The position numbers and the translations under genes are program-made. A stretch of DNA of 63,225 nt, counting the filler, from Octopus bimaculoides (Eukaryota): the NCBI RefSeq assembly GCF_001194135.2. It is 9 parts of 8 records of this genome, joined end to end, with 100 filler letters (N's around TTAATTAATTAA, not from the genome) between each part and the next. Parts side by side here need not be neighbours in the genome. Positions count along the whole stretch, not along the records: positions 21,497 to 42,228 come from NC_068983.1; 8 more parts are not named here. One strand, 5' to 3'. Below, one piece after another: positions 21,395-42,190 of the stretch. Position 1 is the first letter of the stretch; each line of letters starts with the position of its first letter. The notes under the pieces were generated by a model. That model was not told where the DNA came from. It worked only from the letters and a program-made list of their open reading frames with translations, and ran no database searches.

Positions 21395-21552
21395 GTNNNN
21401 NNNNNNNNNNNNNNNNNNNNNNNNNNNNNNNNNNNNNNNNTTAATTAATTAANNNNNNNNNNNNNNNNNNNNNNNNNNNNNNNNNNNNNNNNNNNNTAAA
21501 ACATGAAAAAGGCAAAACTTACAGAGCCGACACGTCTACCGTCCGTCCATAG

Positions 21553-21613
<61 letters not shown>

Positions 21614-21776
21614 TTACGTAGATACAGAGAGTGGTATTAATTACGGTTCGGAATAAAATCCAAAGAATCACCAAAACTAGACGTGGGTATTTTCATACAC
21701 CAAACTTTTCATAAAATCTTCTTCCTCTCTATGAATGTATAATCTTCCAATGTCCTTTAATATGTTTGTAAAAGAG

Positions 21777-22210
21777 AGGTGGCGAGCTGGCAGAATCGTT
21801 AGCACACCGGGTGAAATGCTCAGCGGTATTTCGTCTGCCGTTACGTTCTGAGTTCAAATTTCGCCGAGGTCGACTTAGCCTTTCATCCTTTCGGGGTCGA
21901 TAAATCAAGTATCAGTTACGCACTAGAGTCGATGTAATCGATTTAATCCCTTTGTCTGTCCTTGTTTGTCCCCTCTATGTTTAGCCCCTTGTGGGCAATA
22001 TTTAAATAAGAAACGTTAGCACCTCAGGCAAAATGTTTAGCGGTATTTCGTCTGTCTTTACGTTCTGAGTTCCAATACCGCCACGTTCGACTTTGCCTTT
22101 CATCCTATCGGAGTCGATAAATTAAGTACCAGTTGCGTACTGGGATCAATCTAATTGACTGCCCTCTTCCCCAAAAATTTCGGGCCTTGTGTCTAGAGTA
22201 GAAAAGAATA
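21777..22210 (+). mobile_element. Two head-to-tail SINE family A copies
   Basis: Both carry gttagcac..aaatg.ttagcggtatttcgtctg..ttacgttctgagttc..gcctttcatcct.tcgg.gtcgataaa. Confidence 0.85.
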
Positions 22211-22256
22211 TATTTGTCATAGAAACCCTTACGATTATTTTGAATGTTATACTTAC

Positions 22257-22364
22257 ACCAGCGACGGTATCGTCCATTATTATCAGGTTGACATTTGCAG
22301 GTGAAATTATAGCCTTCACTGATATATACGCCGCCGTTCTTACAAGTCTTATAGCATGGATTTA
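22257..22364 (-). CDS. Exon 5 of WSC-EGF gene: EGF-like module lacking C3 and C6
   Basis: caatAG|TAAATCCATGC...CGCTGGT|GTAAGT; 108 nt, phase 1/1; (V)NPCYKTCKNGGVYISEGYNFTCKCQPDNNGRYRRW. Confidence 0.8.
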
Positions 22365-24211
22365 CTATTGTATAAAAGAAATATAGGTTGCAATTCACAA
22401 TCTCATGTATATTTACATTGGAATAATTGAGGAATTCCATTTTATAAATTTCCTATTTACTGCTTTTACTTATTTTTATTTTTAGAAAATGTGTTTATCA
22501 GATTTGAAAAAAACTCATGAGTTTCCAATTTTTTTTTTTTTTCTACAATAAAAGCATCACTAATTGTTTTTAAGTGTGTAGTGCAAAAGGAAATTGGACA
22601 AAAAATCTGGCCGGAAGTGGGGAGCGGAAATTGATGAACTTTCAAAACTTTTTTTTCATATAAAGGTCCCATAATCATCATTTACAAGGTTGTGTCTAAA
22701 AAAAATAATTGAAAAGTGCGCCGTCACAACGGAGAAAATCCAACCTGTGTGGGTGTACTATTCTGAAAGTCCGCCAAGGCATTATATACATATATATATA
22801 TATATANNNNNNNNNNNNNNNNNNNNNNNNNNNNNNNNNNNNNNNNNNNNNNNNNNNNNNNNNNNNNNNNNNNNNNNNNNNNNNNNNNNNNNNNNNNNNN
22901 NNNNNNNNNNNNNNNNNNNNNNNNNNNNNNNNNNNNNNNNNNNNNNNNNNNNNNNNNNNNNNNNNNNNNNNNNNNNNNNNNNNNNNNNNNNNNNNNNNNN
23001 NNNNNNNNNNNNNNNNNNNNNNNNNNNNNNNNNNNNNNNNNNNNNNNNNNNNNNNNNNNNNNNNNNNNAAAGTAGACTTACTTGCAAAAAAGGACGTGTG
23101 CGTTCAATAATGTAATAATACAAAGAATATATATACATGTATACACATATATATGTACATACTTACATCTACATGTGTATATATATGCATATCAGGGTAC
23201 AGGACGTTAGAACAATGAACTACAGACAACGGAACGAACACATAGGAAAACGGAAAGCCACTTGGAATATTCCTTCATCAGCTGTCTCTGTTCTAACCTG
23301 ACGTTTCCGAAACGTCAGGTATGAAAGTGTACCTTTGATCGTGACCCTTAATTCATCATAAAGATATGTATTGTGAAGTAATGTATCTTAATAGACACTG
23401 TGAAGGAGCACTGGGACCAAACCCTATGATATGAATTAGCTCTATAGTGCATTGTTTAAGAATAATCAAAGATACGTAGTGTGAGCTCGTAGTCTTATCC
23501 ATATAAAGTGCCCAGAGACTGGTTTGTAAGCTTCTAGTAGGAGTTCAAGATGGTCAATATGGAAACGGCTAATTTTGGAAGGGTCAGTATTTTACGCAAA
23601 CAGAAGTTTTTTCTTTTTTTTTTTTGTCGAGGTGTGCTACTTGTCGAGGTGTGCATTGTTATGAAATAGTGTAATTGGGGAACCCACAAAACTGATAGAT
23701 ATCCTTTGAGCAAGGAACCAAAACGATTGGCTATAAATTGTAAGGTGCGAGATCTGGTACTTTGCAAGTTTATGCACTCAGTCACACTTCGCGATTCGAA
23801 TGATGGTCTTGCTGAAGTTTCGTTGCTGAGTAAGGGCCTCCCAGTTTGCATGAATGGGTAAATATCTTCAAGCGTTTTAGGTTGGGTTATTTTCCTGAAA
23901 TACCTAATGCACTTATGAAGGAATCATTCCAAAGACTTGGAGTGTGAATTTAGTTCCGTGGGAAATTTGAAACGAAGTTCCTATAAGGATAGATTCATTC
24001 ACCCTCCTAGTTGTTTCTGATGTAGCCTTGAATACAGGGTATTTGGCATATAATTTCAAAATGTAATTTACTATAACCTGTTTAATTAAGGATCATCTTA
24101 ATTTTTGATTAACGTTCAACCATTTAGCCGATTAAAACCTTGTAATAATCACATATAGGCTTTTAAAAACATATATAAATCAATATAAAATATTAATAAA
24201 CCATAACTAAC

Positions 24212-24335
24212 CAATTTTGTAAAGGCTGCTTGTCCACAAACTTCCGCACATCTGTCTTGACTTGCATTTCATATTACAATTACCGGATTTTTCATATTTG
24301 TTATATTTGTCACTACAAAGACATGCTTTTCCAAA
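24212..24335 (-). CDS. Exon 4 of WSC-EGF gene: WSC domain second half
   Basis: tatgtatgcAG|TTTGGA...AAAATTG|GTTAGT; 124 nt, phase 0/1; FGKACLCSDKYNKYEKSGNCNMKCKSRQMCGSLWTSSLYKI. Confidence 0.88.
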
Positions 24336-24895
24336 CTGCATACATAAATAAAATAGATAATTATATCAAAATAAATTATGATCAGTTAATTAGACAAAGG
24401 GGCAAACGCAAACACAAAGGAAGTTATTGAAACTGAAAAACTTATATGTAAACATATATATATATATATANNNNNNNNNNNNNNNNNNNNNNNNNNNNNN
24501 NNNNNNNNNNNNNNNNNNNNNNNNNNNNNNNNNNNNNNNNNNNNNNNNNNNNNNNNNNNNNNNNNNNNNNNNNNNNNNNNNNNNNNNNNNNNNNNNNNNN
24601 NNNNNNNNNNNNNNNNNNNNNNNNNNNNNNNNNNNNNNNNNNNNNNNNNNNNNNNNNNNNNNNNNNNNNNNNNNNNNNNNNNNNNNNNNNNNNNNNNNNN
24701 NNNNNNNNNNNNNNNNNNNNNNNNNNNNNNNNNNNNNNNNNNNNNNNNNNNNNNNNNNNNNNNNNNNNNNNNNNNNNNNNNNNNNNNNNNNNNNNNNNNN
24801 NNNNNNNNNNNNNNNNNNNNNNNNNNNNNNNNNNNNNNNNNNNNNNNNNNNNNNNNNNNNNNNNNNNNNNNNNNNNNNNNNNNNNNNNNNNNNNN

Positions 24896-24980
<85 letters not shown>

Positions 24981-25389
24981 ATGTATGCATGTATGTATAT
25001 AATGTATATATGTTTATTGAAGATGAAAAACTTCACAAGCTGTTGCTTGGAGTTTCTCGTAATTACTCATCAGACTCGGTTTGATGATCGGTTAAATGAA
25101 ACGCTGAGTAAAAGTTTGTAAAATTTTCAGCTCAAGGAAACAGAATTTTTACTCGTTTTCGGTAGTCTAATACTATTTTCTCAACCCTATTTCATACATG
25201 TGTGCTCATAAGTGTTTAGTAGTCAGTCAGTTAGAAAGGTGTATACGTACATCGCAGAGAGATGTAAGTTGAATTCAACGGGATTTGAACTAATATTTTA
25301 AAAAGACGTATCTAAATGTGATAAGCTATCTTGCTTTACCGCTCTGCTGCTCTGCCTCTCAGTTAGTTTTCGATCAATTTTAATACAAA

Positions 25390-25416
25390 CTAGCGGGACC
25401 CGTGAATATTTCACGG
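25390..25416 (-). mobile_element. Helitron-like 3' terminus (hairpin + CTAG|T)
   Basis: Minus strand: CCGTGAA-ata-TTCACGG hairpin, then gtcccgCTAG followed by T. The 5' end was not located. Confidence 0.55.
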
Positions 25417-26105
25417 AATTGATAGTAAACTTATTGGGTTATTCCTGAAAACTTTATCCAAAAAGCCTGAAAGCCGAGCCTGTATTGTGTCTGTATCAAA
25501 AGCCGCTCATCTGTTCTTTATTGAAAAGTGAAGGAAATTGGAATACGATGAATACTTAATGAACTTTATATATATATATACTTTATATATTTTATGCACA
25601 ATTTTATAGACTTAATACACAGCACTCATAAAATAAATATTCACTCTTATTTTTCCGTTTTTCCCATTAGCAAAAAAAAAATTGCATTTTAAAATTTACA
25701 TGGTCATAATTTCATATCAAGAAAGCAAAGGTTTTATAGTAAAATAATTATTTTATATGTAAAATATAGGGGTTACAATTTCACGGGAGTAAAAATTTAA
25801 TGCAACATGGCATACTCTGAAATCCACATCGTTGGTAACTTATAAGCCAAGGCGATGGGTCAGAGCCAATGCACATTTCAATTTGCGTACAACTTTCAAT
25901 CCATTACTTCTTTGCAGACTATGTTCTTCGTGGAGATTCTCCTTCTTTTTTTTTTCCCTTGTTTGTTAGTGTTGATAACTTTAACTCTCACATTAGATAA
26001 TTTGCGAGTCATTGGAGAATGTAACATATAGCTGACCGCGGCTAGAACGGCCCCGTTTTATCAAAAGTCTGCCCTTGTAATTTAATTATAGTTATTGCAT
26101 ATGAG

Positions 26106-26488
26106 TGGAGGCGCAATGGCCCAGTGGCTAGAGCAACGGACTCGCAGTCATAGGATCGCGGTTTCGATTCTCAGACCGGGCGTTGTGAATGTTTATTGAG
26201 TGAAAACACCTAAAGCTCCACGAGGCTCCGGCAGAGGATGGTGGTGAACCCTGCTGTACTCTTCCACCACAACTTTCTCTCACTCTTACTTCCTGTTTCT
26301 GTTGTGCCTGTAATTCAAAGGGTCAGCCTTGTCACACTGTGTCACGCTGAATATCCCCGAGAACTACGTTAAGTGTACACGTGTCTGTGGAGTGCTCAGC
26401 CACTTGCACGTTAATTTCACGAGCAGGCTGTTCCGTTGATCGGATCAAATGGAAACCTCAACGTCGTAAGCGACGGAGTGCCAACAAC
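26106..26488 (+). mobile_element. Full-length SINE family C with 12-bp TSD
   Basis: tRNA-like head ggcgcaatggcccagtggctagagc...gtttcgattc; ATTGCATATGAG at 26094-26105 and 26489-26500. Confidence 0.9.
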
Positions 26489-26680
26489 ATTGCATATGAG
26501 AAGCGAACGGGAAACTAGTTTCTTTCTAAAGTGAATGGCAAGTTTGGGAAGCGCATACGTTAAGTGATAGGTGATATTAAAAAAACGTGGTTCAATTAAA
26601 AAAGAAATTATTTTTCACCATGCACTCAACATCGCCACCACCACCAACACCACTACCACCATCATTTCTTTCTCTCTCTC

Positions 26681-26779
<99 letters not shown>

Positions 26780-27496
26780 CTTTAATCTCGCCATCATAAC
26801 ATCACCCCTCTGCTAAATCTATATTCCTAACTCTCCTCTACATCACTACCTTCAACTAACCTTTTTAACTACGTAATAAATATTGCGTTCCCCCCTACTA
26901 CATGTCATGGAGGTTTCTCACTCCGTTTTTTCCCTCTCCCTCTTTTACTTTCTCTCTCTTTCTGCCTCACTCTTCACTTTATTCTCTTTCCCTCTCTCTC
27001 TCTTTATTCTTTCTCTTGTTCTGTCGTTCCCTTAAACTAATCACGTGAAAGCGTTACAATTACATTCCGTCTATCTCACGTCATGGACGTTTTTCTCACC
27101 CTCTTTTCTCCCTCTTTTAATCTGTAATCATGTGAAAGCGTTACCGACGGGTTAAGTTACGTAATGATAAGCATTATTATTATAAGATTAATTAACCACC
27201 TGGCCCCGTGCCATCAAAACTGGCGGCTAATTATAGTACTTTATATATAAATATGGATTAAATCAAATTAATACACTTGTCAATGTTATCTAGTGGTTGT
27301 CATTTGGGGCGTGATACTGATCATCGTTTGTTACTGAATAAAACGCTGGTTCACATATACAAACATTCACATACACACACATATACTCACACAGAGTTGA
27401 AATGCTTTCATTACCAGTTTGCCATCACTCCTTCCTTTCTCATTCATTTGTTGTGACGGAGAAAAACACAAGTGTATTATTATAATAGATGTTTAC

Positions 27497-27624
27497 CTGC
27501 AAGCTAGCGTATTTCTCTTTCTTCACACTGCAAATATCTAAGCAACGCTCAACAGAATGTACTTCAGGAGGAGCCCGGTCCCTGGTTCCCATCAGAGAGA
27601 AATCCCTAAAACAGCCAACATATT
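27497..27624 (-). CDS. Exon 3 of WSC-EGF gene: WSC domain first half
   Basis: ctttattttAG|AATATGTTGGCTGT...TTGCAG|GTAAAC; 128 nt, phase 1/0; YVGCFRDFSLMGTRDRAPPEVHSVERCLDICSVKKEKYASLQ (YxGCF...CxxxC...YAxLQ). Confidence 0.9.
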
Positions 27625-27869
27625 CTAAAATAAAGAAATAACGAACAGTTTTAATATTATTTTCTAAATAATATCTAACGCTCTTTTGCTGCGCTTATTG
27701 TATTTAACATTTTAAGTATAGAACACAATCGAATACGAAATCTATTATATTTGTATATATAAATATGTAAATATTATACATTTACAAGAAGGGTGGTACA
27801 TATATACATACATACATACCTACATACATACATACAGGTATGTATTATGTGCGTATGTATGTATGTATG

Positions 27870-28425
27870 TATGTGTGTCATGGTTCAGTTTTATTTTAAG
27901 ATTTCTTACCAACAGAGAAAGAATCGGTTTCTAGCCTAGATTCAAGACACTTTCATTGGAATTTCAACATCAACAACATGGTATTTTTGTGTGTATGTAT
28001 GTATGTATGTATGTATGTACGTATGTATATGTGAAGATTTGTATGTTTTGCTTTATGTATGTATTTTCATGCATATACTTGCATATCTAGACATGCTCGA
28101 ATATATAAAAATGATAAACTTCTGGAAAGTTTTACAGATTTTTACAGTTCCACTGATGGATTGGATCTGTAGTCTTCGAATTAGCAATCTCCTTTCTGGT
28201 TTTGAGACGCCTAATTTCTCACGATTGGTATTTAAGCAGTGTGTTACATATCTCAGGGCCCCAATAATTACAGGTATAAACCTGAACTTGTAATCGGGAT
28301 AAAGTAACTGCAGATTTCTCAATAGTTCAGCATAGGTGTTCTCTTTTTCACTGATCTTCAGCTTTATATTAACATCCGCTGGGCAGCTGATTTCCACAAC
28401 TGTGCAGTTTCTTTTGTCTTCTCTT
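27870..28425 (-). mobile_element. 3' part of an RLE-type non-LTR retrotransposon (R4/NeSL-like), associated with (TACA)n
   Basis: KLCTVVEISCPADVNIKLKISEKENTYAELLRNLQLLYPDYKFRFIPVIIGALRYV...SISGTVKICKTF, followed by a putative 3' UTR; (TATG)n tracts at both ends and internally. Confidence 0.8.
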
Positions 28426-28464
28426 TCTCATCTTATATGTATGTATGTATGTATGTATTATGTA

Positions 28465-28765
28465 GGTAGGTGGGTAGGTGCCCAAAGAAATAGTGTCAGC
28501 TGCTGGTGACGGTGCAACGTCTGCTGTGGCTGTAGAGGCCAACGCTACTGGTTTTTCCTTCGGTTGAGTGTGCTTTTCTTTGGTGGCGAGTTCCTGTTTT
28601 TCTTCTCTTCGCTTCATCCCCTTTCGTAGTATTTGACTTCAACGGGGGCGATCATTTGCGACATTCTCCCATCTGAGGATGTCCAGGTCAAGTGATTTCA
28701 CATCTCTCTTGCAGGCGCCCTTGAAACGAAGATGAGGTCATCCACAAGTTTTTGTGCCGGTGGCA
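28465..28765 (-). mobile_element. RTE LINE C-terminal fragment
   Basis: Minus strand: PHLRFKGACKRDVKSLDLDILRW..VANDRPR.SQILRKGMKRREEKQE; comparable to the C-terminus of the RTE at 62450-62680. Confidence 0.7.
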
Positions 28766-28914
28766 TGTATGTATGATAGTATTCGTAGGACAGTTGACTG
28801 GTGAATATTCCGCCATCTCTAATCTAAATAGATATTAAACTTGGTTTTTTAAAATTTATTTAATATTACCATCAAGTTGTTTATATATATATATATATAC
28901 ATATATATACTTAC

Positions 28915-28953
28915 GGGCATCTTCACTGGCGTGCAGAATGATCACAGGGAAAG
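28915..28953 (-). CDS. Exon 2 of WSC-EGF gene: end of signal peptide
   Basis: ttctttattttAG|CTTTCCCTGTG...GATGCCC|GTAAGT; 39 nt, phase 1/1; (A)FPVIILHASEDA(Q). Confidence 0.85.
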
Positions 28954-29066
28954 CTAAAATAAAGAAACCAGAATGTTAGAAATTAATAGAACGAAAGACG
29001 CGTTCTTTGTGAGAAAATTACTATGAAAACAAGGTCTGTTGTTGAATAGTGGACATTAGATCTTAC

Positions 29067-29106
29067 CAATTATTGCAAGCAGTTTGAATGTTTCCATCTT
29101 GAACAT
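29067..29106 (-). CDS. First coding exon of WSC-EGF gene
   Basis: ATG TTC AAG ATG GAA...ATA ATT G|GTAAGA; MFKMETFKLLAII, phase-1 donor, 113-nt intron to exon 2. An in-frame alternative ATG lies at 29097. Confidence 0.75.
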
Positions 29107-29302
29107 GCTGCTCTGTGAACACCCAGCAAATGATGTAGGTTCATCATATCTCTACATATATATAGAGAAATAGATATGCATATACGTGTGTGTGTGTGTG
29201 GCTTGTGTGCGTGTGTGTCAGTGTAGGCGAGTGTATGTATTTGTATAAGCGTGTATATGGCTTGGATTTTTATACACGTGTATCTCTGTATGTATGTAGG
29301 TC

Positions 29303-29362
<60 letters not shown>

Positions 29363-29384
29363 TATATGTATATATATAATTATT

Positions 29385-29419
<35 letters not shown>

Positions 29420-29836
29420 TATATAATTATTAAATATATATGTATGTTTTATGTGTTTGTGTGTGGACGTGTATGAGTATATATGTGCGTGCATGCATGT
29501 GTGCATGGGTACTGCTGTGCGTCGTTTCTTGCATTGGATTCCTATAAAAGAAAAAAAGAAAGAAGAAAAGAAGAAAATAAACTTAATAATGACAGGTGTT
29601 TTCTTTTTGTCTTAAATCACGTTTGAAAACATTGTCACTATTCATTTCAATTCTTACTAATAATCATCAATATTCTAACACAACGTTCAATAAGTGATCT
29701 GTTGTTTTAACATATTTTTAGAACCTCAACGAATATGTCCACGCCTTACTGCATCTGTTGCCATTTTACTTACTCACGTTCAGGACTTGTTTTCAATCAT
29801 AATACCTAACATAACGACATATCGATATTCTTACTC

Positions 29837-29897
<61 letters not shown>

Positions 29898-30427
29898 GAG
29901 TGAGAGAGCAGAGCATGCCATCAAAGTGACACTGGGTTAAAATATACGAAGCCCATTATACCCATCATGACTACCCGCCTGATAAGGGTACACCAGGCAC
30001 ATGCATCACAACCATATGTGCGCGACATGGTGATCTCATATCAAGATAAACAGCGCATGACCTCGCAGATGGGGCCCAGCTAGAATTTTCTTCAGGCCGA
30101 GTAGCCCATCCCGCTCAAAAGGTCCCTGAATAAGGTTTGTTTAAGGATGCTGAGCAAAACACCTCTCAACACATGGCTATAATGCTCCCCCACTATTTCT
30201 GCTCATGATCAGAGATGCACATATTGTCAGTCACCAAGGGACATGCTCAACTGGCTAAGGTCAAACAACAGACAAGCAAATCTGTGGTATTGAGCAGAAT
30301 ATTTGCTGTAGCCTATCTTTTATACCAAGACAAAACAATGTACATGATAACACTTCCAATCAGTTCAGATGAGAAGCCATGAGAGCCACTGCTTGGTACT
30401 GCATCTGGGAAGTTATTATTATTATTA

Positions 30428-30482: not shown

Positions 30483-31280
30483 GTTGGCAGCATCGTCAGC
30501 GTGCCGGGCGAAATGCTTAGCGGTATTTCGCTCCATTCTGAGTTCAAATTCGGCCGAGGACTTTTCATCCTTTCGGGGTCGATAAAATAAATACCAGTTG
30601 AACACTGGGGTCGATTTAATCGACTAATACCCTCCTCCAAAATTGCTGCCCTTGTGGCAAAGTTTGGAAGCTTGAAATTATTATCATTATTCTTAAGGTG
30701 GCGAGCTGGCAGAATCGTTAGCACGCCGCGCAAAATCATTACTAGCATTTCGTCCATCTCTACGTTCTGAGTTCAAATTTCGCCGAGGTCGTTTTTGCTT
30801 TTCATCCTTTCGAGGTCGGTGAAATAATTACCAGTTACGTACTGGGGCTGATGCAATCGACGTTGCTCCTCCTCCAAATTTCAGGTCTTCTGCTTAAAGG
30901 AGATCCTTTTCTTTTTATTTAGTCAGGACATGCTCATATAGTGATTAACGAAAACCAAACGCAGTTACAACATTGGTTTTCCGGAACTTTAGTTTCAAAA
31001 GCCTTTCCGAATTACTGACTATTTCCGAAGCAAGAGTTGTCATCTCAAGACTGAACAAATATCGGTTTCAAATCTTGACCCCAGATCAGTAATTTGGTGG
31101 GGAGGGGCAAGGTGAATGCAATGACCTCAGTGCCCAACTGGTACTTATTTCATCGACCCCAAAAGGATAAAAAGAAAAGTCGACCTAATAGGAATTTGAA
31201 CACGGAACTCAAGGACGGACAAAATGCTTAGCGGCATTTTGTCCGACGTGGTAACTATTTTGCCTGCTCACCACCTTAAA
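30480..31280. mobile_element. Cluster of three SINE family A copies (+,+,-)
   Basis: Family A motifs at about 30480-30665, 30695-30895 and 31085-31280. Confidence 0.8.
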
Positions 31281-31449: not shown

Positions 31450-31885
31450 GGTTAGAACAGCGTACTCGCGGTCGAGGGAACGCGGGTTCGAATCCCAGAC
31501 TGGGCGATGAGTGTGTTTATGAGCGAAACACCTAAAGCGGCTCTGGCAGAAAATAATGGTGAACTTTTGCTGACTTTCTTCGCAACTTTCTCTCACCTGC
31601 TACGGATCGGCGTCCCGTTCAGGTGGGGGAACCTATACGCCAATGAAACCCGGAAACCGAGAAGGAACAAACAACATACATATATTGAAATATTGCATTT
31701 CACATTACTACATTATTTGTTAGCACACCGAGCGAAATGCTTAGCAGTATTTCACCCGTCGCTACGTTCTGAGTTCAAATTCCGCCGAGGTCGATTTTGC
31801 CTTTCCTCCTAAATTAAATACCAGTGAAATCGACTTGTCCCCACCCCCAAAACTTCAGGTCTTATGCCTATAAGAGGAAGGATTA
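31450..31885 (+). mobile_element. tRNA-headed SINE related to family C, followed by a family A copy
   Basis: gtggttagaacagcgtactcgcggtcg...ggttcgaatcccagac...gtgtgtttatgagcgaaacacctaaagc shares the C head; an A copy starts near 31720. Confidence 0.65.
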
Positions 31886-32022
31886 TTTGTCTGCTCTAGT
31901 AAACTTACATCGCAGGAGATACAACAGTCTGGAAAGAGTATCAAAACGTCCAAAACTGGTGAATACGATGGACCTCAATTATATATGCATGCGTGTATAC
32001 TTGCGCGTGTTTGTGTGTCTGT

Positions 32023-32134
<112 letters not shown>

Positions 32135-32504: not shown

Positions 32505-32880
32505 TGAGTGGACTGGCAGTCGATTGCATCGCCGCCAGTGCTCGACTGGTACTTTATTTTATCGAAACTGAAAGAATGAATGGCTAAGTCAGTCTCGGCA
32601 GAATTCAAGCTCAGAACAAATGGCGCTAAACATTTTATCCGATGTGCTAAGGATTCTGTCAATATTGTTTTCAAATTTTGGTACAAGGCCAGCAATTTCC
32701 AGGAGGAGGTAAGTTGAGTGCATTGACCCCAGTACTCAACTGGTATTTATTTTATTGGCCTCGAAAGGATGAAAGTCAAAGTCGACCATGGCGGAATTTG
32801 AAAGCAGAACGTGAAGACGGACGAAATGCCGCTAAGCATTTCACCCGACGTGCTAACGATTCAGTCTGATTGCTGCCTTA
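32505..32880 (-). mobile_element. Two SINE family A copies
   Basis: Reverse-complement family A motifs (gacgaaatgccgctaagcatttc, gaaaggatgaaag). Confidence 0.75.
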
Positions 32881-34261
32881 GGAATATTCAATATTAACAT
32901 CGGTTTGTCATAATCTATTAGTCTAAGAATATCTTACATTTTTCTTTGAATCCAAAGTCAAAGCAATGTATAAACTATCTTTTTCCACCTGTCTATCACT
33001 ATTGGTTTCTGGTCTTCTGTACTTGTTATTTGTGTATTCAACTTGTTCAAATTTCTTGGCACTCAAAGTTTTTTTTGCAATCCCAAATCTCATGCAGGAC
33101 ATATTTCATTATTTCTCAATTCAAAGGCGGTGTGATGGCAGAGTCTTATTTTATCGACCCCCTTTTGATGACCAGCTGGCAGAAGAGATCAAAGATCTGA
33201 TAAGGTTTGATCCACTGAGAATAAGATAGACTGGGTGTGTCATATACATTTATCCATCATACAAACAATTATTTATCCATTATTCAAACATATTAAAGCA
33301 GTCTTATTCGTAAACATAGTTCCAGATGTTGCATAATGTTTGTTAACGTTCTTTTGTTTTATTGTTCGCTCTTTATTAAATATGGTGGCTCAAACAAAAC
33401 GTGAACAAATTGTAGCATTGAAAATGGCTGGGATAAAGGATTGTAAAATGAAAATGGCAAGTATAAATAGTTAAAGGCTAAAGTGAAAGCAAAGGAGACG
33501 ATTTTGAATTGTAAATATATGTAAAATTGATATTATACGTATGTAACAATCAACCCCTAAATTTTCATCAACCAAGACCTAGAACTTTATATTGTATGAT
33601 AAAATAAATAATGGCTAAATACGAGTATATAAACCGCCCCCAGTATATTAGAAAAACAAAACAGAATATATTGATATTCATAAGCATATGAAAATAATAG
33701 CAGGTTTAATAAAGAACTAGAACAATGTGCAACTTGAATTTAATTTTGCAGTGCTCTGGGCTATGATTTATATTGTATTACAATTCATCATTCAGATTCC
33801 ATGTGTTAGCTTTTGCAATTTAGTAAATTTATCAATAAGGTGGTAAGCAGGCAGAATCGTTACTACGACGGGCGAAATGCTTAGTGCTATTTTGTCTGTC
33901 CTTACGTTCTAAGTTCGATTTTGTATTTCTTCTTTTGAGGTGGATAAATAAGTACCAGTTGAGCAACTTAACTACTCCTGGATATGGGTATAAAAGTTGC
34001 ACACCTCTGCCAAGCCATGTCAGTCCAGTGTGCCAGAGTGCAATCACTAAACCATTATGTTCTCAAGCTCAAATTCACGGCCTCCATATCAGACTGTGGT
34101 TGTTGGAGAGAACATGCTGAGGCCTTCGTCCTTCAGTGGACTGGACACGGGCAAAAGAAAGAAGAAAGAATGTAATTTATCAATTAAAGCTTATGCATTC
34201 GATCGTTATTTTAGCAAGATTGATAGAACAAGAGAAGAGATGACCCAACTCTCCTATCACT

Positions 34262-36689: not shown

Positions 36690-36761
<72 letters not shown>

Positions 36762-37471
36762 AGTTAATACATACACCACCTACTAGTCACTATTGTTCCC
36801 CACTATTATTCTAAGCCGGAATAGTAGCACCTGCCATGGTCCCAGTTATAAGACAATTAGCATATCATGGAAAAAATTCAGGCACAAAGCCTCACTGCCT
36901 TATGAGTGTTTTAGGAAAGGGAAAGGCTAGGAAGTCAACTTTGACAATTTCGAGGAGCAGAGTCCCCGAAGCAGTTCAGTATCCTCTTTGACACCTTTCC
37001 GGCGAATCCAGGGCAGGTAGAGCACTCCAGCCTGTAAAGCAATTCACCTAAGAGAAGGCAATTCTTATATAAAAACTGCAACCTAATGATAACCGCAGCT
37101 CTCTAAATCCGCTGAGCTGCAGTGATCGGATCTACAAGTCTAAAGAGTGGGAATGGACTGATTCCCACTTTAAAACTATTAAGTCCAGGAAGGAAGAAAT
37201 GATGAGCAGTGCTGAAGATCGGTTTACTTAGCTACATGTAGGCGTATTGCTCTTACTCAATCTCTGGACAGGAAACAACCACCATTATTAGATATGCCTG
37301 TATTATAATGAGTCAAAAATTGTCCGCAGTTTCGTCAAAAGTTACTTTAGGTTAGCTACACTGCTTTCAGCGTTGACGTGCCAAAAGTAATTAGCTGTAG
37401 TAGTTACTTAACCGAAATTTGACCTTGATCGCTCCGGTTTTCTTTTTTTTTGTGTGTGTTATAGAGTAAAA

Positions 37472-38140: not shown

Positions 38141-40712
38141 AAGAGTACATATGGGCGTGCGCATGTGTGCGTGAATGTGAGTACATAAAGTTTTCATTTT
38201 GCTTGCACTGTATTGCAGGACATTCACTTCATCAAATTGGACATAGATTAAAATGATTTCGATGCCTTCTGAGAGTCCCGTATGCTTTTGGTTCGCGTGC
38301 TTTGCTATGGTTGTGTTAATCATATAGTCATGAAGAATCGACCTAAGCTTCTCTCTGAAGTTTACCAATTCTATAATTACTAATATTTCTAACTCTAACC
38401 AAAACTGAAGAGCATTGTCGAATCTAGCTAATACGAAACCGAACATTCTAGTTATTATAACGATATACTGGTTATTTTGTTTTCAAGATATCTCTTTACT
38501 ACTTTCCGTGGTTGTAACAGCTGGTCTGTGTTCTTGTAACGCACTAAAGGGCAGATGTTTCCCAGGGGCTAAATGGTGATATTAAATCTGATGTAAGTTT
38601 AATCAACCTCCGAAGATCAGTCCTTTGAGCTTATGCTTCATCTATCTACTCAATTTCACCCAGAGTATAAAGGTTACCAAAATCACTTCGTAATAACGTA
38701 TTTTCTGGCAGATAAATCGACGTAATATATAATGTAAATATTAAGTGTAAACATCCAAACAGCGACACTGTCTTCCCAGACATGTTGCATTTCACATAGA
38801 ACGTTTTATCTTCCAAATTCATCTTTGCTTATAAGTTGGCCTACTCATTTTAGCTGTAAATTCTGGTCCGAAAACGTTCGACTTGTATGTCGGAAAATAG
38901 TACAGCCTGTTAGTAATTTTAATTAGTAAAAACTTTGGTCTTTTTTTTTTATGCCATTACAAATAAATATATTTGCATGTATTGATATATATTAGTGTAT
39001 ACAACATGTGATACACTCCTGCATTTTGGGAGCGTACGCGCATGTTTCTTATCAATTATGGGGTTTCAACAGATTCTGAACGTGTAAAGTCCATGAAATT
39101 ACAAGTTCGTAAAATATTTTGCAAATTGTGTGATGCATTGTAGATGTGTTATGTGTATGTATAATATACCTGTTGAGTTTAGAACTGCCGCACAAGCGAC
39201 TGAAAGTAAATGTTTGTTATGCGTATTGTTCTTAAAATCAATATCGTATCTTAAATTTATCTTTGTTGGATATGTGGCAAAGTGGACGAGGGAGTTTTGC
39301 TTGAAAATTTGTAGTTTAAATTGTTGTTTGTGCAAAGAGAGGTTTTCTTCCCTAAATTTCAAAATATTTGCTGTTGAAGTTATGCTTTTTAATTTTTCTG
39401 TGATATACATATACAGATTTCATCTACTGCCTCATCCCTTGTACTTGTATTCGCAGAACTTAGATATGATACTCGATTTAATTTGGGTGGGTTGTCGACG
39501 TTTCATGCCATATTAAACAATGAGATTAGCATCTCTTTTACTCTTATCTCTAAACAAACCCAAATGCTGTGTCTCTCGCGTTAAAGGTATTTCCAGTCAT
39601 TCCAATGTGTGTATGTATATATATATATATATATATATAAACAATTTGAAAATCCTATACGATTAGGTGAAAAGCGCTTTATTTAATTTATAAAACATGT
39701 GACATTAATAAAAATCTGTAAATGTACAAACATCCAAATTTCTGAGTACCTTAATTTTTTCCTATAATATAATTTCTGTACATTACCTATAATATAATTT
39801 CTGTACATTATTATATAACTATTTGAATGTATTTTCAAATAGTTATATAATAAAGTTAAGAATAAGGTATGGCAAACACATATTTTCAAATGTATCAATT
39901 AGTTATTAGAAACAATTTAACTGCAAATGCAAGAAATCAACAGCAGCGACAATTTCTAATAACCACGAGAAGATTTTAAAGACGAAAAAATTTTTAAAAA
40001 GAAGAATTTAAAGAAAGACGAAGAATTTTTTTTTAAATAGATATTTAAACTCTTTATTTGTGCTTGTATTTATAATAGTTTACTTGAAGTAATTTAGGAT
40101 ATAGGTCATTCAGAAAAACCTGCAAAATATTGAAAAATGAAAAGCATTAGAAATATTTAAAACACATCGATATTTATCTATATAATATACTTAACGTATT
40201 CCAGGTAATATCCCTTTATGACTATTTCTAAAGAGATTTAAGTGTTATACAAATAAAGATTTTACCCCAGACCTGCTTCTATTGCATAATTCGAATTTTA
40301 TTGCTTGTACGGTGTCATCACAAATCAGTATATTGTTTATAAGTTTCTGTATACTTCAGACTGGCCTATTTGAACTCCTTTCGGAGGTGACACAAGTACG
40401 TAACATTGACAATCCGCACCAACAGTGAAATACGTATCTGTCGCTATCGCAGCTACTTTCGGGACGATTTCTTTTACACCTAGATCTGAAGCATATTTTA
40501 TATGCAATATATTTATAGGGATTTTTCCCGGATGTTAAACATTTTAGAACTGCTTCTGTTCCATAATCAGTATTTATTTACTTCAACGATGCATTAGCAC
40601 ATCTAAGTATAATTATTAAAAATCGCAAAAAAAGTAGAATTAATTCAATTCAAACACAAGGAAACAAGCAAGCTGAGAAATAAACAAAGTGATTCAACAG
40701 TCAAGCAAATTG

Positions 40713-40773
<61 letters not shown>

Positions 40774-40803
40774 GCAGGCAGACAGGCAGACAGATAAATA
40801 GAT

Positions 40804-40866
<63 letters not shown>

Positions 40867-41189
40867 CTAGCCAGCCAGGCAGACATACAGACAACTACAT
40901 TTTATTCCTAAAGATCCTTGAAAGATAAGAAATATGATGATTATCTCGGCTCTACGAGGACGTGCTGATCGTTAGAATACCTTCGATCACAAGTCCACTC
41001 AGTCGAGTGAATTGCGATTAAGAAGAACAATGCAACTGTTAAATAATTAATGCAATTGTTATATGATTGACTAATTTGTTCACAAACTATTAATATCTAA
41101 CTTGATTTTTTAATTGTCTTCACTGTGTGCGGCGTGTAAAGTCCGTCTCAAAATTCACAGTAGAAATACGGCTCCCTAATAATAATCCA

Positions 41190-41578: not shown

Positions 41579-41791
41579 CAACGTATATTGTGTCTTCGTC
41601 ACCATACAAACCATGATGCTTTATAGCACGTTCGAAGATATGACATTGATCTTCAGTAGCTGAATAATCTAATGCACTACATTTCACGGCCAAGCATGTC
41701 TTCTCACATTCCAGTTTTGAGTTAATGTCGTTAACCAATTTTTTATCGTCGCAGGTGCTCAGTGCCGCTCCTTTAATTACATTCTTTTCAC
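41579..41791 (-). CDS. Internal exon encoding a PAN/Apple-like domain
   Basis: gtttcAG|GTGAAAAG...TACGTTG|GTAAGT; 213 nt, phase 1/1, open; GEKNVIKGAALSTCDDKKLVNDINSKLECEKTCLAVKCSALDYSATEDQCHIFERAIKHHGLYGDEDTIYV (CxxxC...C..xY......C pattern). Confidence 0.8.
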
Positions 41792-41822
41792 CTGAAACTA
41801 ATATTATACATATATGTGTATG

Positions 41823-41880
<58 letters not shown>

Positions 41881-42190
41881 TAGACACAGAGAAAGTTAGT
41901 GAATGAGAGAGAAATGGAATAAAAAGAAGGAAAATACACAGAATGTATATATTTTCATGAGATAAAATAGATATATAGTCAACCGGTTTCTCTTTTGCTA
42001 ATCATAACTAAGAAATTAGTTAAAATATTACAATTTTATGGTATCATAAGTTTTCAGTCCATGTTAGTAGTAGCGGGAAAGTTGTTTCGTCAACGAATCA
42101 CTAACTAAATAAATCTAAGGGATGGTAAATAGCAAATTTATATATATAACATATATAATATATATAATATATATAATATAATGTATATGT

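What the first reader, a model, noticed from the sequence alone, without database searches (positions are those of the whole stretch)
22257..29106. Hidden five-exon gene for a small secreted WSC + EGF-like protein
The ORF track does not reveal this gene. Five minus-strand segments with GT-AG sites and matching phases (1, 1/1, 1/0, 0/1, 1/1) join into MFKMETFKLLAIIAFPVIILHAS-EDAQYVGCFRDFSLMGTRDRAPPEVHSVERCLDICSVKKEKYASLQFGKACLCSDKYNKYEKSGNCNMKCKSRQMCGSLWTSSLYKIVNPCYKTCKNGGVYISEGYNFTCKCQPDNNGRYRRW. Seen: splice sites, phases and 8 Cys in the WSC part. Known: WSC is an 8-Cys extracellular, often carbohydrate-binding module (Kremen, polycystin-1, fungal Wsc1). Inferred: a compact lineage-specific secreted lectin-like protein, possibly from skin, mucus or a gland. 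No transmembrane exon was found.
Basis: partly seen in the sequence, partly recalled or inferred. Interest (0 to 1): 0.7.

Follow-up and report, generated by a model that had tools for sequence, protein, structure and literature searches.

The report
Annotated octopus WSC gene; fifth exon unproven
The first four exons are a real but already catalogued Octopus bimaculoides gene for a small secreted protein with one sugar-binding-type (WSC) domain, while the proposed fifth "EGF-like" exon fails every test available here, so the finding is mostly ordinary.

Summary
All five minus-strand segments exist at the stated coordinates, with AG/GT borders and the stated phases, and they join into the stated peptide.

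**Exons 1-4: real and already public.** They match RefSeq XP_014776971.1, "WSC domain-containing protein 2-like", Octopus bimaculoides, 108 aa, at 100% identity. That model starts at the second Met. It ends ...LYKIG* by reading through the exon-4 donor (GGT TAG).

**WSC domain: confirmed.**
- Exons 3+4 give a full Pfam WSC match: 42.4 bits against a cut-off of 27.8, profile positions 1-81 of 82.
- So the gap in intron 3 hides no part of the domain.
- The predicted fold matches yeast Wsc1 and Kremen.

**Exon 5: not established.**
- Its only match is Pfam hEGF at 16-19 bits, below the 29.3 cut-off.
- Tyr replaces EGF Cys3. Cys6 appears only by reading past the proposed donor.
- No protein contains it and nothing is homologous to it.
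- It lies across an assembly gap and has no stop or following exon in the piece.
- The exon-4 donor, GTTAGT, is the weakest of the set.

**Verdict.** This is a known gene for a secreted single-WSC, lectin-like protein of about 10 kDa. The WSC+EGF reading is possible, about 25%, but unproven.

The parts
29067..29106 (-). Exon 1: start codon and the first half of the signal peptide. ATG at 29106; second ATG at 29097, which is the one RefSeq uses. Donor TTG|GTAAGA, phase 1.
   Evidence: There is an in-frame stop 15 codons upstream of the first ATG. The sequence from 29097 is identical to the XP_014776971.1 N-terminus METFKLL.
28915..28953 (-). Exon 2: the rest of the signal peptide (AFPVIILHAS) and the start of the mature protein. 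Phase 1-1.
   Evidence: Identical to XP_014776971.1. The strongest hydrophobic window is LAIIAFPVIIL, Kyte-Doolittle 3.1.
27497..27624 (-). Exon 3: N-terminal half of the WSC domain (Cys 1-3). Phase 1-0.
   Evidence: On its own it matches Pfam WSC profile positions 1-45. Local WSC HMM E 2e-7.
24207..24335 (-). Exon 4: C-terminal half of the WSC domain (Cys 4-8).
   Evidence: Local WSC HMM E 2.6e-12. The P0001 C-terminus ...LYKIG. Donor table.
24081..24086 (-). ATTAAA, a candidate poly(A) signal about 120 nt after the TAG. It fits exon 4 being the last exon.
   Evidence: This is a pattern match only, so the role is inferred.
24471..24895 (.). Assembly gap inside intron 3, flanked by (TA)n and (CA)n microsatellite.
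   Evidence: The WSC profile is continuous across the E3/E4 join.
22807..23068 (.). Assembly gap between exon 4 and candidate exon 5. The link between E1-E4 and E5 depends on this scaffold join.
   Evidence: Not testable here.
22233..22364 (-). Candidate exon 5: a Cys-rich, weakly EGF-like open segment, status unproven. Acceptor ...CAATAG|. The second keeps the sixth Cys.
   Evidence: Pfam hEGF 16-19 bits against a cut-off of 29.3. No homologue.

Best explanation
This is the Octopus bimaculoides gene already in RefSeq as XP_014776971.1. It has four exons on the minus strand, 29106 to 24207.

How it most likely works:
- It encodes a precursor of 108-111 aa.
- An N-terminal signal peptide (exons 1-2) sends it into the secretory pathway (inferred).
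- Cleavage near HAS|ED would leave a basic protein of about 88 aa and 10 kDa (inferred).
- That mature protein is essentially one WSC domain, held by four disulfides in a PAN/apple-like fold (exons 3-4).
- By analogy with other WSC domains, it most likely acts as a soluble protein with a single binding site for glycans or other extracellular ligands. Likely settings are mucus, extracellular matrix or humoral defence. The ligand is unknown.

The 3' end:
- The transcript most likely ends after exon 4. The old phase-1 module boundary is read through into GGT TAG, and an ATTAAA lies about 120 nt downstream.
- The 'EGF-like' segment 1.85 kb further on is either a chance Cys-rich open frame or a decayed relic of an ancestral WSC-EGF arrangement. 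That arrangement exists in bivalve proteins.
- That segment has not been shown to be part of this mRNA.
For: Shown:
- Exact 100% identity of E1-E4 with XP_014776971.1, including its C-terminus ...KIG.
- Pfam WSC E 8.5e-11, 42.4 bits against a cut-off of 27.8, over profile positions 1-81 of 82.
- E3 and E4 are the only WSC hits among 879 six-frame segments, and they cover complementary halves of the domain.
- The 8 Cys fall on the near-invariant Cys columns of 19 homologues.
- The AlphaFold model (pLDDT 75.6) matches yeast Wsc1 7pz2 (E 1.3e-5, TM 0.67/0.74) and Kremen 5fwu/5fwt.
- The hydrophobic N-terminus scores KD 3.1 and no later hydrophobic segment exists. The mature part has pI 8.8 and 8 Cys.
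- The donors of introns 1-3 are GTAAGA, GTAAGT and GTAAAC. The proposed exon-4 donor is GTTAGT, with T at +3, and the same T creates the TAG.
- Several family members also end within a few residues of their last WSC domain, for example P0002, P0024, P0051, P0068 and P0098.
- Against E5, see the calls cited in the Against line of the five-exon rival.

From the literature:
- WSC is treated as a carbohydrate-binding module, and fungal WSC lectins are glucan-binding (PMC9252488, PMC5336659).
- A WSC-domain gene is among the upregulated genes for secreted proteins in oyster mantle cells (bioRxiv 10.1101/2023.01.19.524809).
Against: - No transcript evidence could be consulted. The RefSeq model is itself a prediction.
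- Its protein cluster has no member from transcriptome assemblies.
- E5 is the best splice-compatible candidate downstream of E4. It is the only one with a pyrimidine tract plus a GTRAG donor apart from one low-complexity segment.
- E5 carries the EGF hallmark C-x-N-G-G, and it is the only EGF-type Pfam hit among about 300 segments scanned.
- The WSC-to-EGF linker length (14 residues) resembles that in bivalve WSC-EGF proteins.
- No signal-peptide predictor was run and no glycan binding has been tested.
Confidence: 0.62

Rival explanations
1. Exon 4 splices at TTG|GTTAGT to exon 5, giving a secreted WSC + atypical EGF-like protein that continues into at least one more exon beyond the edge of the piece (below 21497) or inside the gap.
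For: - Phase-compatible AG/GT borders, and E5 is the best candidate downstream of E4.
- Phase 1-1 symmetry typical of EGF modules, with either donor.
- The motif CKNGG...C-x-C gives a sub-threshold Pfam hEGF hit, E 0.0016-0.016.
- WSC directly followed by EGF occurs in Mactra and Mytilus proteins with similar linker length.
- E5 GC is 0.41 against 0.36 for the introns.
Against: - hEGF scores 16-19 bits against a cut-off of 29.3, and PF00008 gives no hit.
- Tyr (TAT) stands where Cys3 should be, leaving an odd number of Cys.
- EGF HMMs built from WSC-family proteins rank E5 18th (2.5 bits) and 139th (-0.0 bits) among six-frame segments.
- No homologue or containing protein in 5.8 billion clusters or in the 149 retrieved WSC-family representatives.
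- No stop codon and no next exon. The read-through tail runs into a SINE copy.
- The E4 donor is weak.
- The link crosses an assembly gap.
- The AlphaFold model of E5 has pLDDT 63.6 and no significant fold match.
Confidence: 0.25
2. E5 is a real exon of a different, unannotated gene lying downstream on the same strand, for example a multi-EGF gene whose other exons are in the gap or beyond the edge of the piece. It has nothing to do with the WSC gene.
For: - Phase 1-1 EGF-type exons usually occur in arrays.
- The piece ends 760 nt after E5.
- Another unannotated phase 1-1 module exon (PAN, 41579-41791) shows that this region holds unmodelled extracellular-module exons.
Against: - No protein in the database contains E5.
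- The same weaknesses of the EGF assignment apply as above.
- No signal-peptide or other exon is seen between E4 and E5.
Confidence: 0.08
3. The whole locus is a non-functional gene fragment: a duplicated WSC module from a multi-WSC gene, predicted by software but not expressed.
For: - No transcriptome-derived copy in the protein collection.
- The stop codon sits exactly on an old module boundary.
- The nearest relatives are multi-WSC proteins.
Against: - Four exons are intact with good splice sites, an ATG, a signal peptide, all 8 Cys and a full-length Pfam match with no frameshift or stop.
Confidence: 0.05

Closest known systems
RefSeq XP_014776971.1, 'WSC domain-containing protein 2-like' [Octopus bimaculoides]
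   Same: Identical over exons 1-4 (100%, 108 aa), with the same three splice junctions.
   Different: It does not include exon 5.
Vertebrate WSCD1/WSCD2, the source of the RefSeq name
   Same: They share a WSC domain.
   Different: From my own knowledge, WSCD proteins are type II membrane proteins with two WSC domains and a sulfotransferase-like domain. Here there is one WSC domain, no other Pfam domain and an N-terminal signal peptide. The name reflects best-hit similarity only.
Kremen1/2 WSC domain and yeast Wsc1 sensor domain (PDB 5fws/5fwt/5fwu, 7pz2)
   Same: Same fold. Foldseek E 1.3e-5 to 7e-4, TM 0.6-0.74. Same 8-Cys framework.
   Different: Kremen is Kringle-WSC-CUB-TM. Wsc1 is WSC plus a Ser/Thr-rich stalk, a TM segment and a tail. 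The octopus protein is a free single domain without an anchor, so it cannot signal as these do.
Bivalve multidomain WSC-EGF proteins (Mactra antiquata KAL4222352.1; Mytilus edulis XP_071162416.1; M. galloprovincialis VDI14319.1)
   Same: WSC domains at 28-34% identity to this one.
   Different: They are very large (1686-2816 aa) with many WSC, EGF, SUEL-lectin, VWD and Kringle modules. Their EGFs pass Pfam thresholds and have six Cys. E5 does neither.
Glycerotoxin of the bloodworm Glycera (EGF + two WSC + CCP; PMC5336659)
   Same: A secreted invertebrate protein that combines EGF and WSC modules.
   Different: It is about 150 kDa with a different domain order and a large C-terminal part. No specific sequence relationship was found here.
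Fungal secreted WSC lectins (e.g. Serendipita indica WSC proteins; PMC9252488)
   Same: Secreted, anchor-free WSC proteins that bind glucans. This is the functional analogy I favour.
   Different: They usually have several WSC domains and so several binding sites. They come from a different kingdom, and their ligand (beta-glucan) cannot be assumed here.

Membership tests
WSC domain (Pfam PF01822) | Profile score above the curated gathering cut-off over the full domain | tested here: met
   42.4 bits against 27.8, E 8.5e-11, profile positions 1-81 of 82, spanning the E3+E4 join.
WSC domain (Pfam PF01822) | Eight conserved cysteines | tested here: met
   The mature part has 8 Cys. Seven of them are listed as invariant or near-invariant columns in the alignment with 19 homologues.
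WSC domain (Pfam PF01822) | PAN/apple-like alpha/beta fold as in solved WSC structures | tested here: met
   AlphaFold model pLDDT 75.6. Top PDB matches are Wsc1 7pz2 (TM 0.67/0.74) and Kremen 5fwu/5fwt/5fws, all at probability 1.00.
WSC domain (Pfam PF01822) | Carbohydrate or ligand binding | not testable with these tools
   Needs a glycan array or pull-down with recombinant protein.
EGF-like domain (PF00008 / PF12661 hEGF and relatives), for exon 5 | Profile score above the curated cut-off | tested here: not met
   hEGF scores 16.1-19.2 bits against 29.3. PF00008 gives no hit on the real sequence. Local EGF HMMs give 2.5 and -0.0 bits.
EGF-like domain, for exon 5 | Six cysteines in the C1-C6 pattern (three disulfides) | tested here: not met
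Tyr (TAT) stands at the Cys3 position after C-x-N-G-G-x.
EGF-like domain, for exon 5 | EGF fold | tested here: inconclusive
   The single-sequence AlphaFold model has pLDDT 63.6 and pTM 0.29. Foldseek finds nothing at E<=0.001.
WSCD1/WSCD2 (the RefSeq name) | Two WSC domains plus a sulfotransferase-like domain and a membrane anchor | tested here: not met
   There is one WSC domain and no other domain in Pfam. The only hydrophobic segment is the N-terminal signal-like one.
Kremen | Kringle-WSC-CUB-TM architecture | tested here: not met
   No Kringle or CUB hit in the protein or in about 300 six-frame segments of the piece.
Classical secreted protein | Cleavable N-terminal signal peptide and no other membrane segment | tested here: inconclusive
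   The n-region is MFKMETFK and the h-region is LLAIIAFPVIIL (KD 3.1), followed by HAS|ED. No later hydrophobic window exists. No signal-peptide predictor was available.

The most novel reading that the evidence does not exclude
Exon 5 is genuine. The gene would then encode a WSC domain fused to an atypical five/six-Cys EGF-like module, and the public model would be truncated. Together with the unannotated PAN exon 12.5 kb upstream on the same strand, it would mark a small cluster of fast-evolving, octopus-specific secreted proteins of the PAN/WSC fold class assembled from phase 1-1 exons.
Probability: 0.2. Interest if true: 0.3.

Novelty: already known. Interest (0 to 1): 0.15.

Why it matters
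It matters little beyond annotation hygiene. The gene is in RefSeq and belongs to a large, well-known domain family.

Three small points of value:
- The public name ("WSC domain-containing protein 2-like") is misleading. The protein is a free single WSC domain, not a WSCD-type enzyme.
- The stop codon sits exactly on an old phase-1 module boundary: a T at donor position +3 makes GGT TAG. This is a tidy example of how a single-domain secreted protein can be carved out of a multi-module ancestor.
- If exon 5 were confirmed, the RefSeq model would need extending.

Nobody knows what small soluble WSC proteins do in molluscs, so a ligand screen could be informative. Nothing here makes this copy a priority.

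Tried and rejected
1. Searches for proteins containing or resembling E5. The 5.8-billion-cluster search found no candidate. phmmer against 149 WSC-family representatives found nothing.
2. Genomic or transcript context. Exact look-up of XP_014776971.1 and of the E5 ORF found nothing on record. So no flank beyond 21497 and no transcript evidence could be obtained.
3. AlphaFold plus Foldseek on the E5 peptide gave a low-confidence model and no significant match, which is uninformative.
4. A hypothetical Tyr-to-Cys version of E5 was used only as a diagnostic. It raises hEGF to 22.3 bits and brings PF00008 to 20.6 bits, both still below cut-off. The missing Cys is therefore not the only weakness.
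5. Could the upstream PAN exon be part of this gene? Splicing into a possible acceptor just before the ATG (cacag|AGCAGCATG) changes the frame and runs into a stop in exon 2. This was worked out from the sequences. Rejected; the PAN exon is treated as a separate neighbour.
6. Pfam scan of about 300 six-frame segments for further exons found none, only 6 unrelated noise hits.
7. ARAGORN and Rfam on the piece found nothing.
8. The bacterial promoter/terminator scan was irrelevant for a eukaryote.
9. One broad literature search was badly framed and uninformative. No paper mentions XP_014776971.

Full report
**What is in the sequence**

| Exon | Coordinates |
|---|---|
| E1 | 29067-29106 |
| E2 | 28915-28953 |
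| E3 | 27497-27624 |
| E4 | 24212-24335 |
| E5 | 22257-22364 |

Each internal segment is preceded by AG and followed by GT. An in-frame stop lies 15 codons upstream of the first ATG.

**The two gaps**

- Gap 24471-24895 lies in intron 3 and gap 22807-23068 in the putative intron 4. Both abut simple repeats.
- The intron-3 gap is harmless.
  - The joined E3+E4 peptide matches Pfam WSC from profile position 1 to 81 of 82 (42.4 bits, cut-off 27.8, E 8.5e-11). E3 alone covers positions 1-45.
  - I built a WSC HMM from 300 of the 368 homologous domains found. It hits only two of the 879 six-frame segments of the piece: E3 (positions 21-68) and E4 (63-112). These are abutting halves of the domain.
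- The second gap separates E4 from E5. Adjacency and continuity there cannot be tested with what I have.

**The gene is already known**

- A search of 5.8 billion protein clusters returned one hit at 100% identity. It is XP_014776971.1, [quoted passage not shown], 108 aa.
- It uses the same E1-E2, E2-E3 and E3-E4 junctions.
- It starts at the second Met (METFKLL, ATG at 29097).
- It ends ...SSLYKIG.
- So the piece is O. bimaculoides DNA and the "hidden" gene is a public four-exon model.
- Its cluster has a single member and no transcriptome-derived copy. Exact look-ups found no contig on record.

**The WSC part is solid**

- The eight cysteines lie in columns that are invariant or nearly so in 19 homologues.
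- An AlphaFold model made with that alignment (pLDDT 75.6) has as best PDB matches the yeast Wsc1 sensor domain (7pz2, E 1.3e-5, TM 0.67/0.74) and Kremen (5fwu, 5fwt, 5fws). More remote matches are PAN/apple domains.
- The N-terminus has a charged n-region and a strongly hydrophobic stretch, LAIIAFPVIIL (KD 3.1). No later hydrophobic segment exists.
- The mature part, if cut after HAS, is 88 aa, about 10 kDa, pI 8.8, with 8 Cys. Secretion is inferred, because no signal-peptide predictor was available.
- An exhaustive HMMER search of 1.84 billion representatives gave 1443 relatives. Apart from the query protein itself, none exceeds about 43% identity per domain. Most are multi-WSC proteins. The copy is therefore divergent, or lineage-specific at the level this library can see.

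**Exon 5 does not pass**

In its favour:
- Among 123 open AG..GT candidates of 60 nt or more that enter in phase 1 downstream of E4, only E5 and one low-complexity segment combine a pyrimidine tract with a GTRAG donor.
- It is phase 1-1 with either of two donors, 22257 or 22233.
- It contains C-x-N-G-G and C-x-C.
- It is the only EGF-type Pfam hit among about 300 scanned segments.
- WSC followed after 13-15 residues by an EGF exists in bivalve proteins: Mactra KAL4222352.1 and Mytilus XP_071162416.1 and VDI14319.1.

Against it:
- The only Pfam match is hEGF at 16-19 bits, against a cut-off of 29.3.
- Non-coding segments of the same piece reach equal or better E-values against unrelated families: 6 hits among 149 segments, best 1.5e-4.
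- EGF HMMs built from WSC-family proteins rank it 18th (2.5 bits) and 139th (-0.0 bits).
- Tyr (TAT) stands where Cys3 should be.
- Even a diagnostic Tyr-to-Cys version stays under the cut-offs.
- No protein contains or resembles it.
- It has no stop and no successor exon. The read-through tail enters a SINE copy.
- The AlphaFold model of the peptide is poor and matches nothing.
- The proposed exon-4 donor is GTTAGT, whereas the three confirmed donors are GTAAGA, GTAAGT and GTAAAC. The T at +3 is the same base that creates the TAG stop.
- An ATTAAA lies about 120 nt after the stop.
- Several relatives also end within a few residues of their last WSC domain.

**Most likely account**

- This is a four-exon gene for a small secreted single-WSC protein.
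- The WSC module is a phase 1-1 cassette split by a phase-0 intron. Its 3' boundary looks like a former splice donor that is now read through into a stop.
- This suggests, by inference, descent from a multi-module WSC gene. E5 would then be either a chance open frame or a decaying remnant of a former EGF exon.
- Mechanistically I expect a soluble protein with a single binding site for glycans or other extracellular ligands.
- This rests on analogy with fungal secreted WSC lectins (PMC9252488) and on the general view of WSC as a carbohydrate-binding module (PMC5336659). A WSC-domain gene is among the upregulated genes for secreted proteins in oyster mantle cells (bioRxiv 10.1101/2023.01.19.524809). 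The ligand and tissue are unknown.

**Probabilities**

| Model | Probability |
|---|---|
| Four-exon model | about 0.6 |
| E5 belongs to another gene | about 0.08 |
| Unexpressed fragment | about 0.05 |

**Comparison with known families**

- Membership in the WSC domain family is met on sequence, cysteines and fold.
- Membership in EGF is not met.
- It is not a WSCD1/2-type, Kremen-type or Wsc1-type protein by architecture.

**Verdict**

- The WSC and secreted interpretation is right.
- "Hidden" and "+EGF, five exons" are not supported.
- Novelty: already known. Interest: low.

Noticed in passing
window 41579-41791, minus strand: An unannotated PAN/apple-domain exon. It has AG/GT borders (…AGTTTCAG| to GTTG|GTAAGT) and is phase 1-1. 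Pfam PAN_1 scores 24.9 bits, above the 21.4 cut-off. No protein in the 5.8-billion-cluster database contains it. It lies 12.5 kb upstream of the WSC gene on the same strand, and PAN and WSC share a fold class. It probably belongs to a separate neighbouring gene whose other exons were not found.
   Followed up: partly
window 28053-28397 (and 28369-28617), minus strand, inside intron 2: An open frame '...YKFRFIPVIIGALRYVTHCLNTNREKLGVS...LQIQSISGTVKICKTF'. From memory it resembles the C-terminal tail of invertebrate non-LTR retrotransposon ORF2 proteins. No Pfam hit. Probably a transposon remnant in the intron.
   Followed up: partly
window 21777-21945, 21994-22179, 30528-30644, 30696-30898, 31719-31810, 32676-32886 (inverted), 33859-33950: Multiple copies, 61-86% alike, of one short interspersed repeat (…GTTCTGAGTTCAAATT.CGCCGAGGTCGA…TTTCATCCT…). 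Two tandem copies fill the stretch from about 80 nt below candidate exon 5 (from 22179) down to 21777. The read-through tail of exon 5 is made of this repeat.
   Followed up: partly
window ~26100-26500, plus strand (intron 3): An element with a tRNA-like head (GGAGGCGCAATGGCCCAGTGGCTAGAGCAACGGACTCGCAGTCATAGGATCGCGGTTTCGATTCTCAGACC). It looks like a tRNA-derived SINE. ARAGORN and Rfam call nothing there.
   Followed up: partly
window 40359-40577, minus strand: A 73-codon open segment with 7 Cys (…CLTSGKNPYKYIAYKICFRSRCKRNRPESSCDSDRYVFHCWCGLSMLRTC…), lying between the PAN exon and the WSC gene. No Pfam hit. It could be chance or an exon of the neighbouring gene.
   Followed up: no
window 24896-24990, 26690-26790, 29290-29420, 29830-29900, 31990-32130, 36690-36770, 40650-40900, 41810-41890, 21540-21620: The piece is dense in microsatellites: (CA)n, (GA)n, (TA)n, (TAA)n and (GATA)n. 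Both assembly gaps abut such runs, which probably explains the gaps.
   Followed up: no
L001 (Logan contig SRR9649869_172160, 1959 nt): The best distant relative (P0002, 583 aa) is an intronless ORF of six tandem WSC domains. It shares the 'NCNMKC' motif with the octopus protein. The source organism is not known to me.
   Followed up: partly
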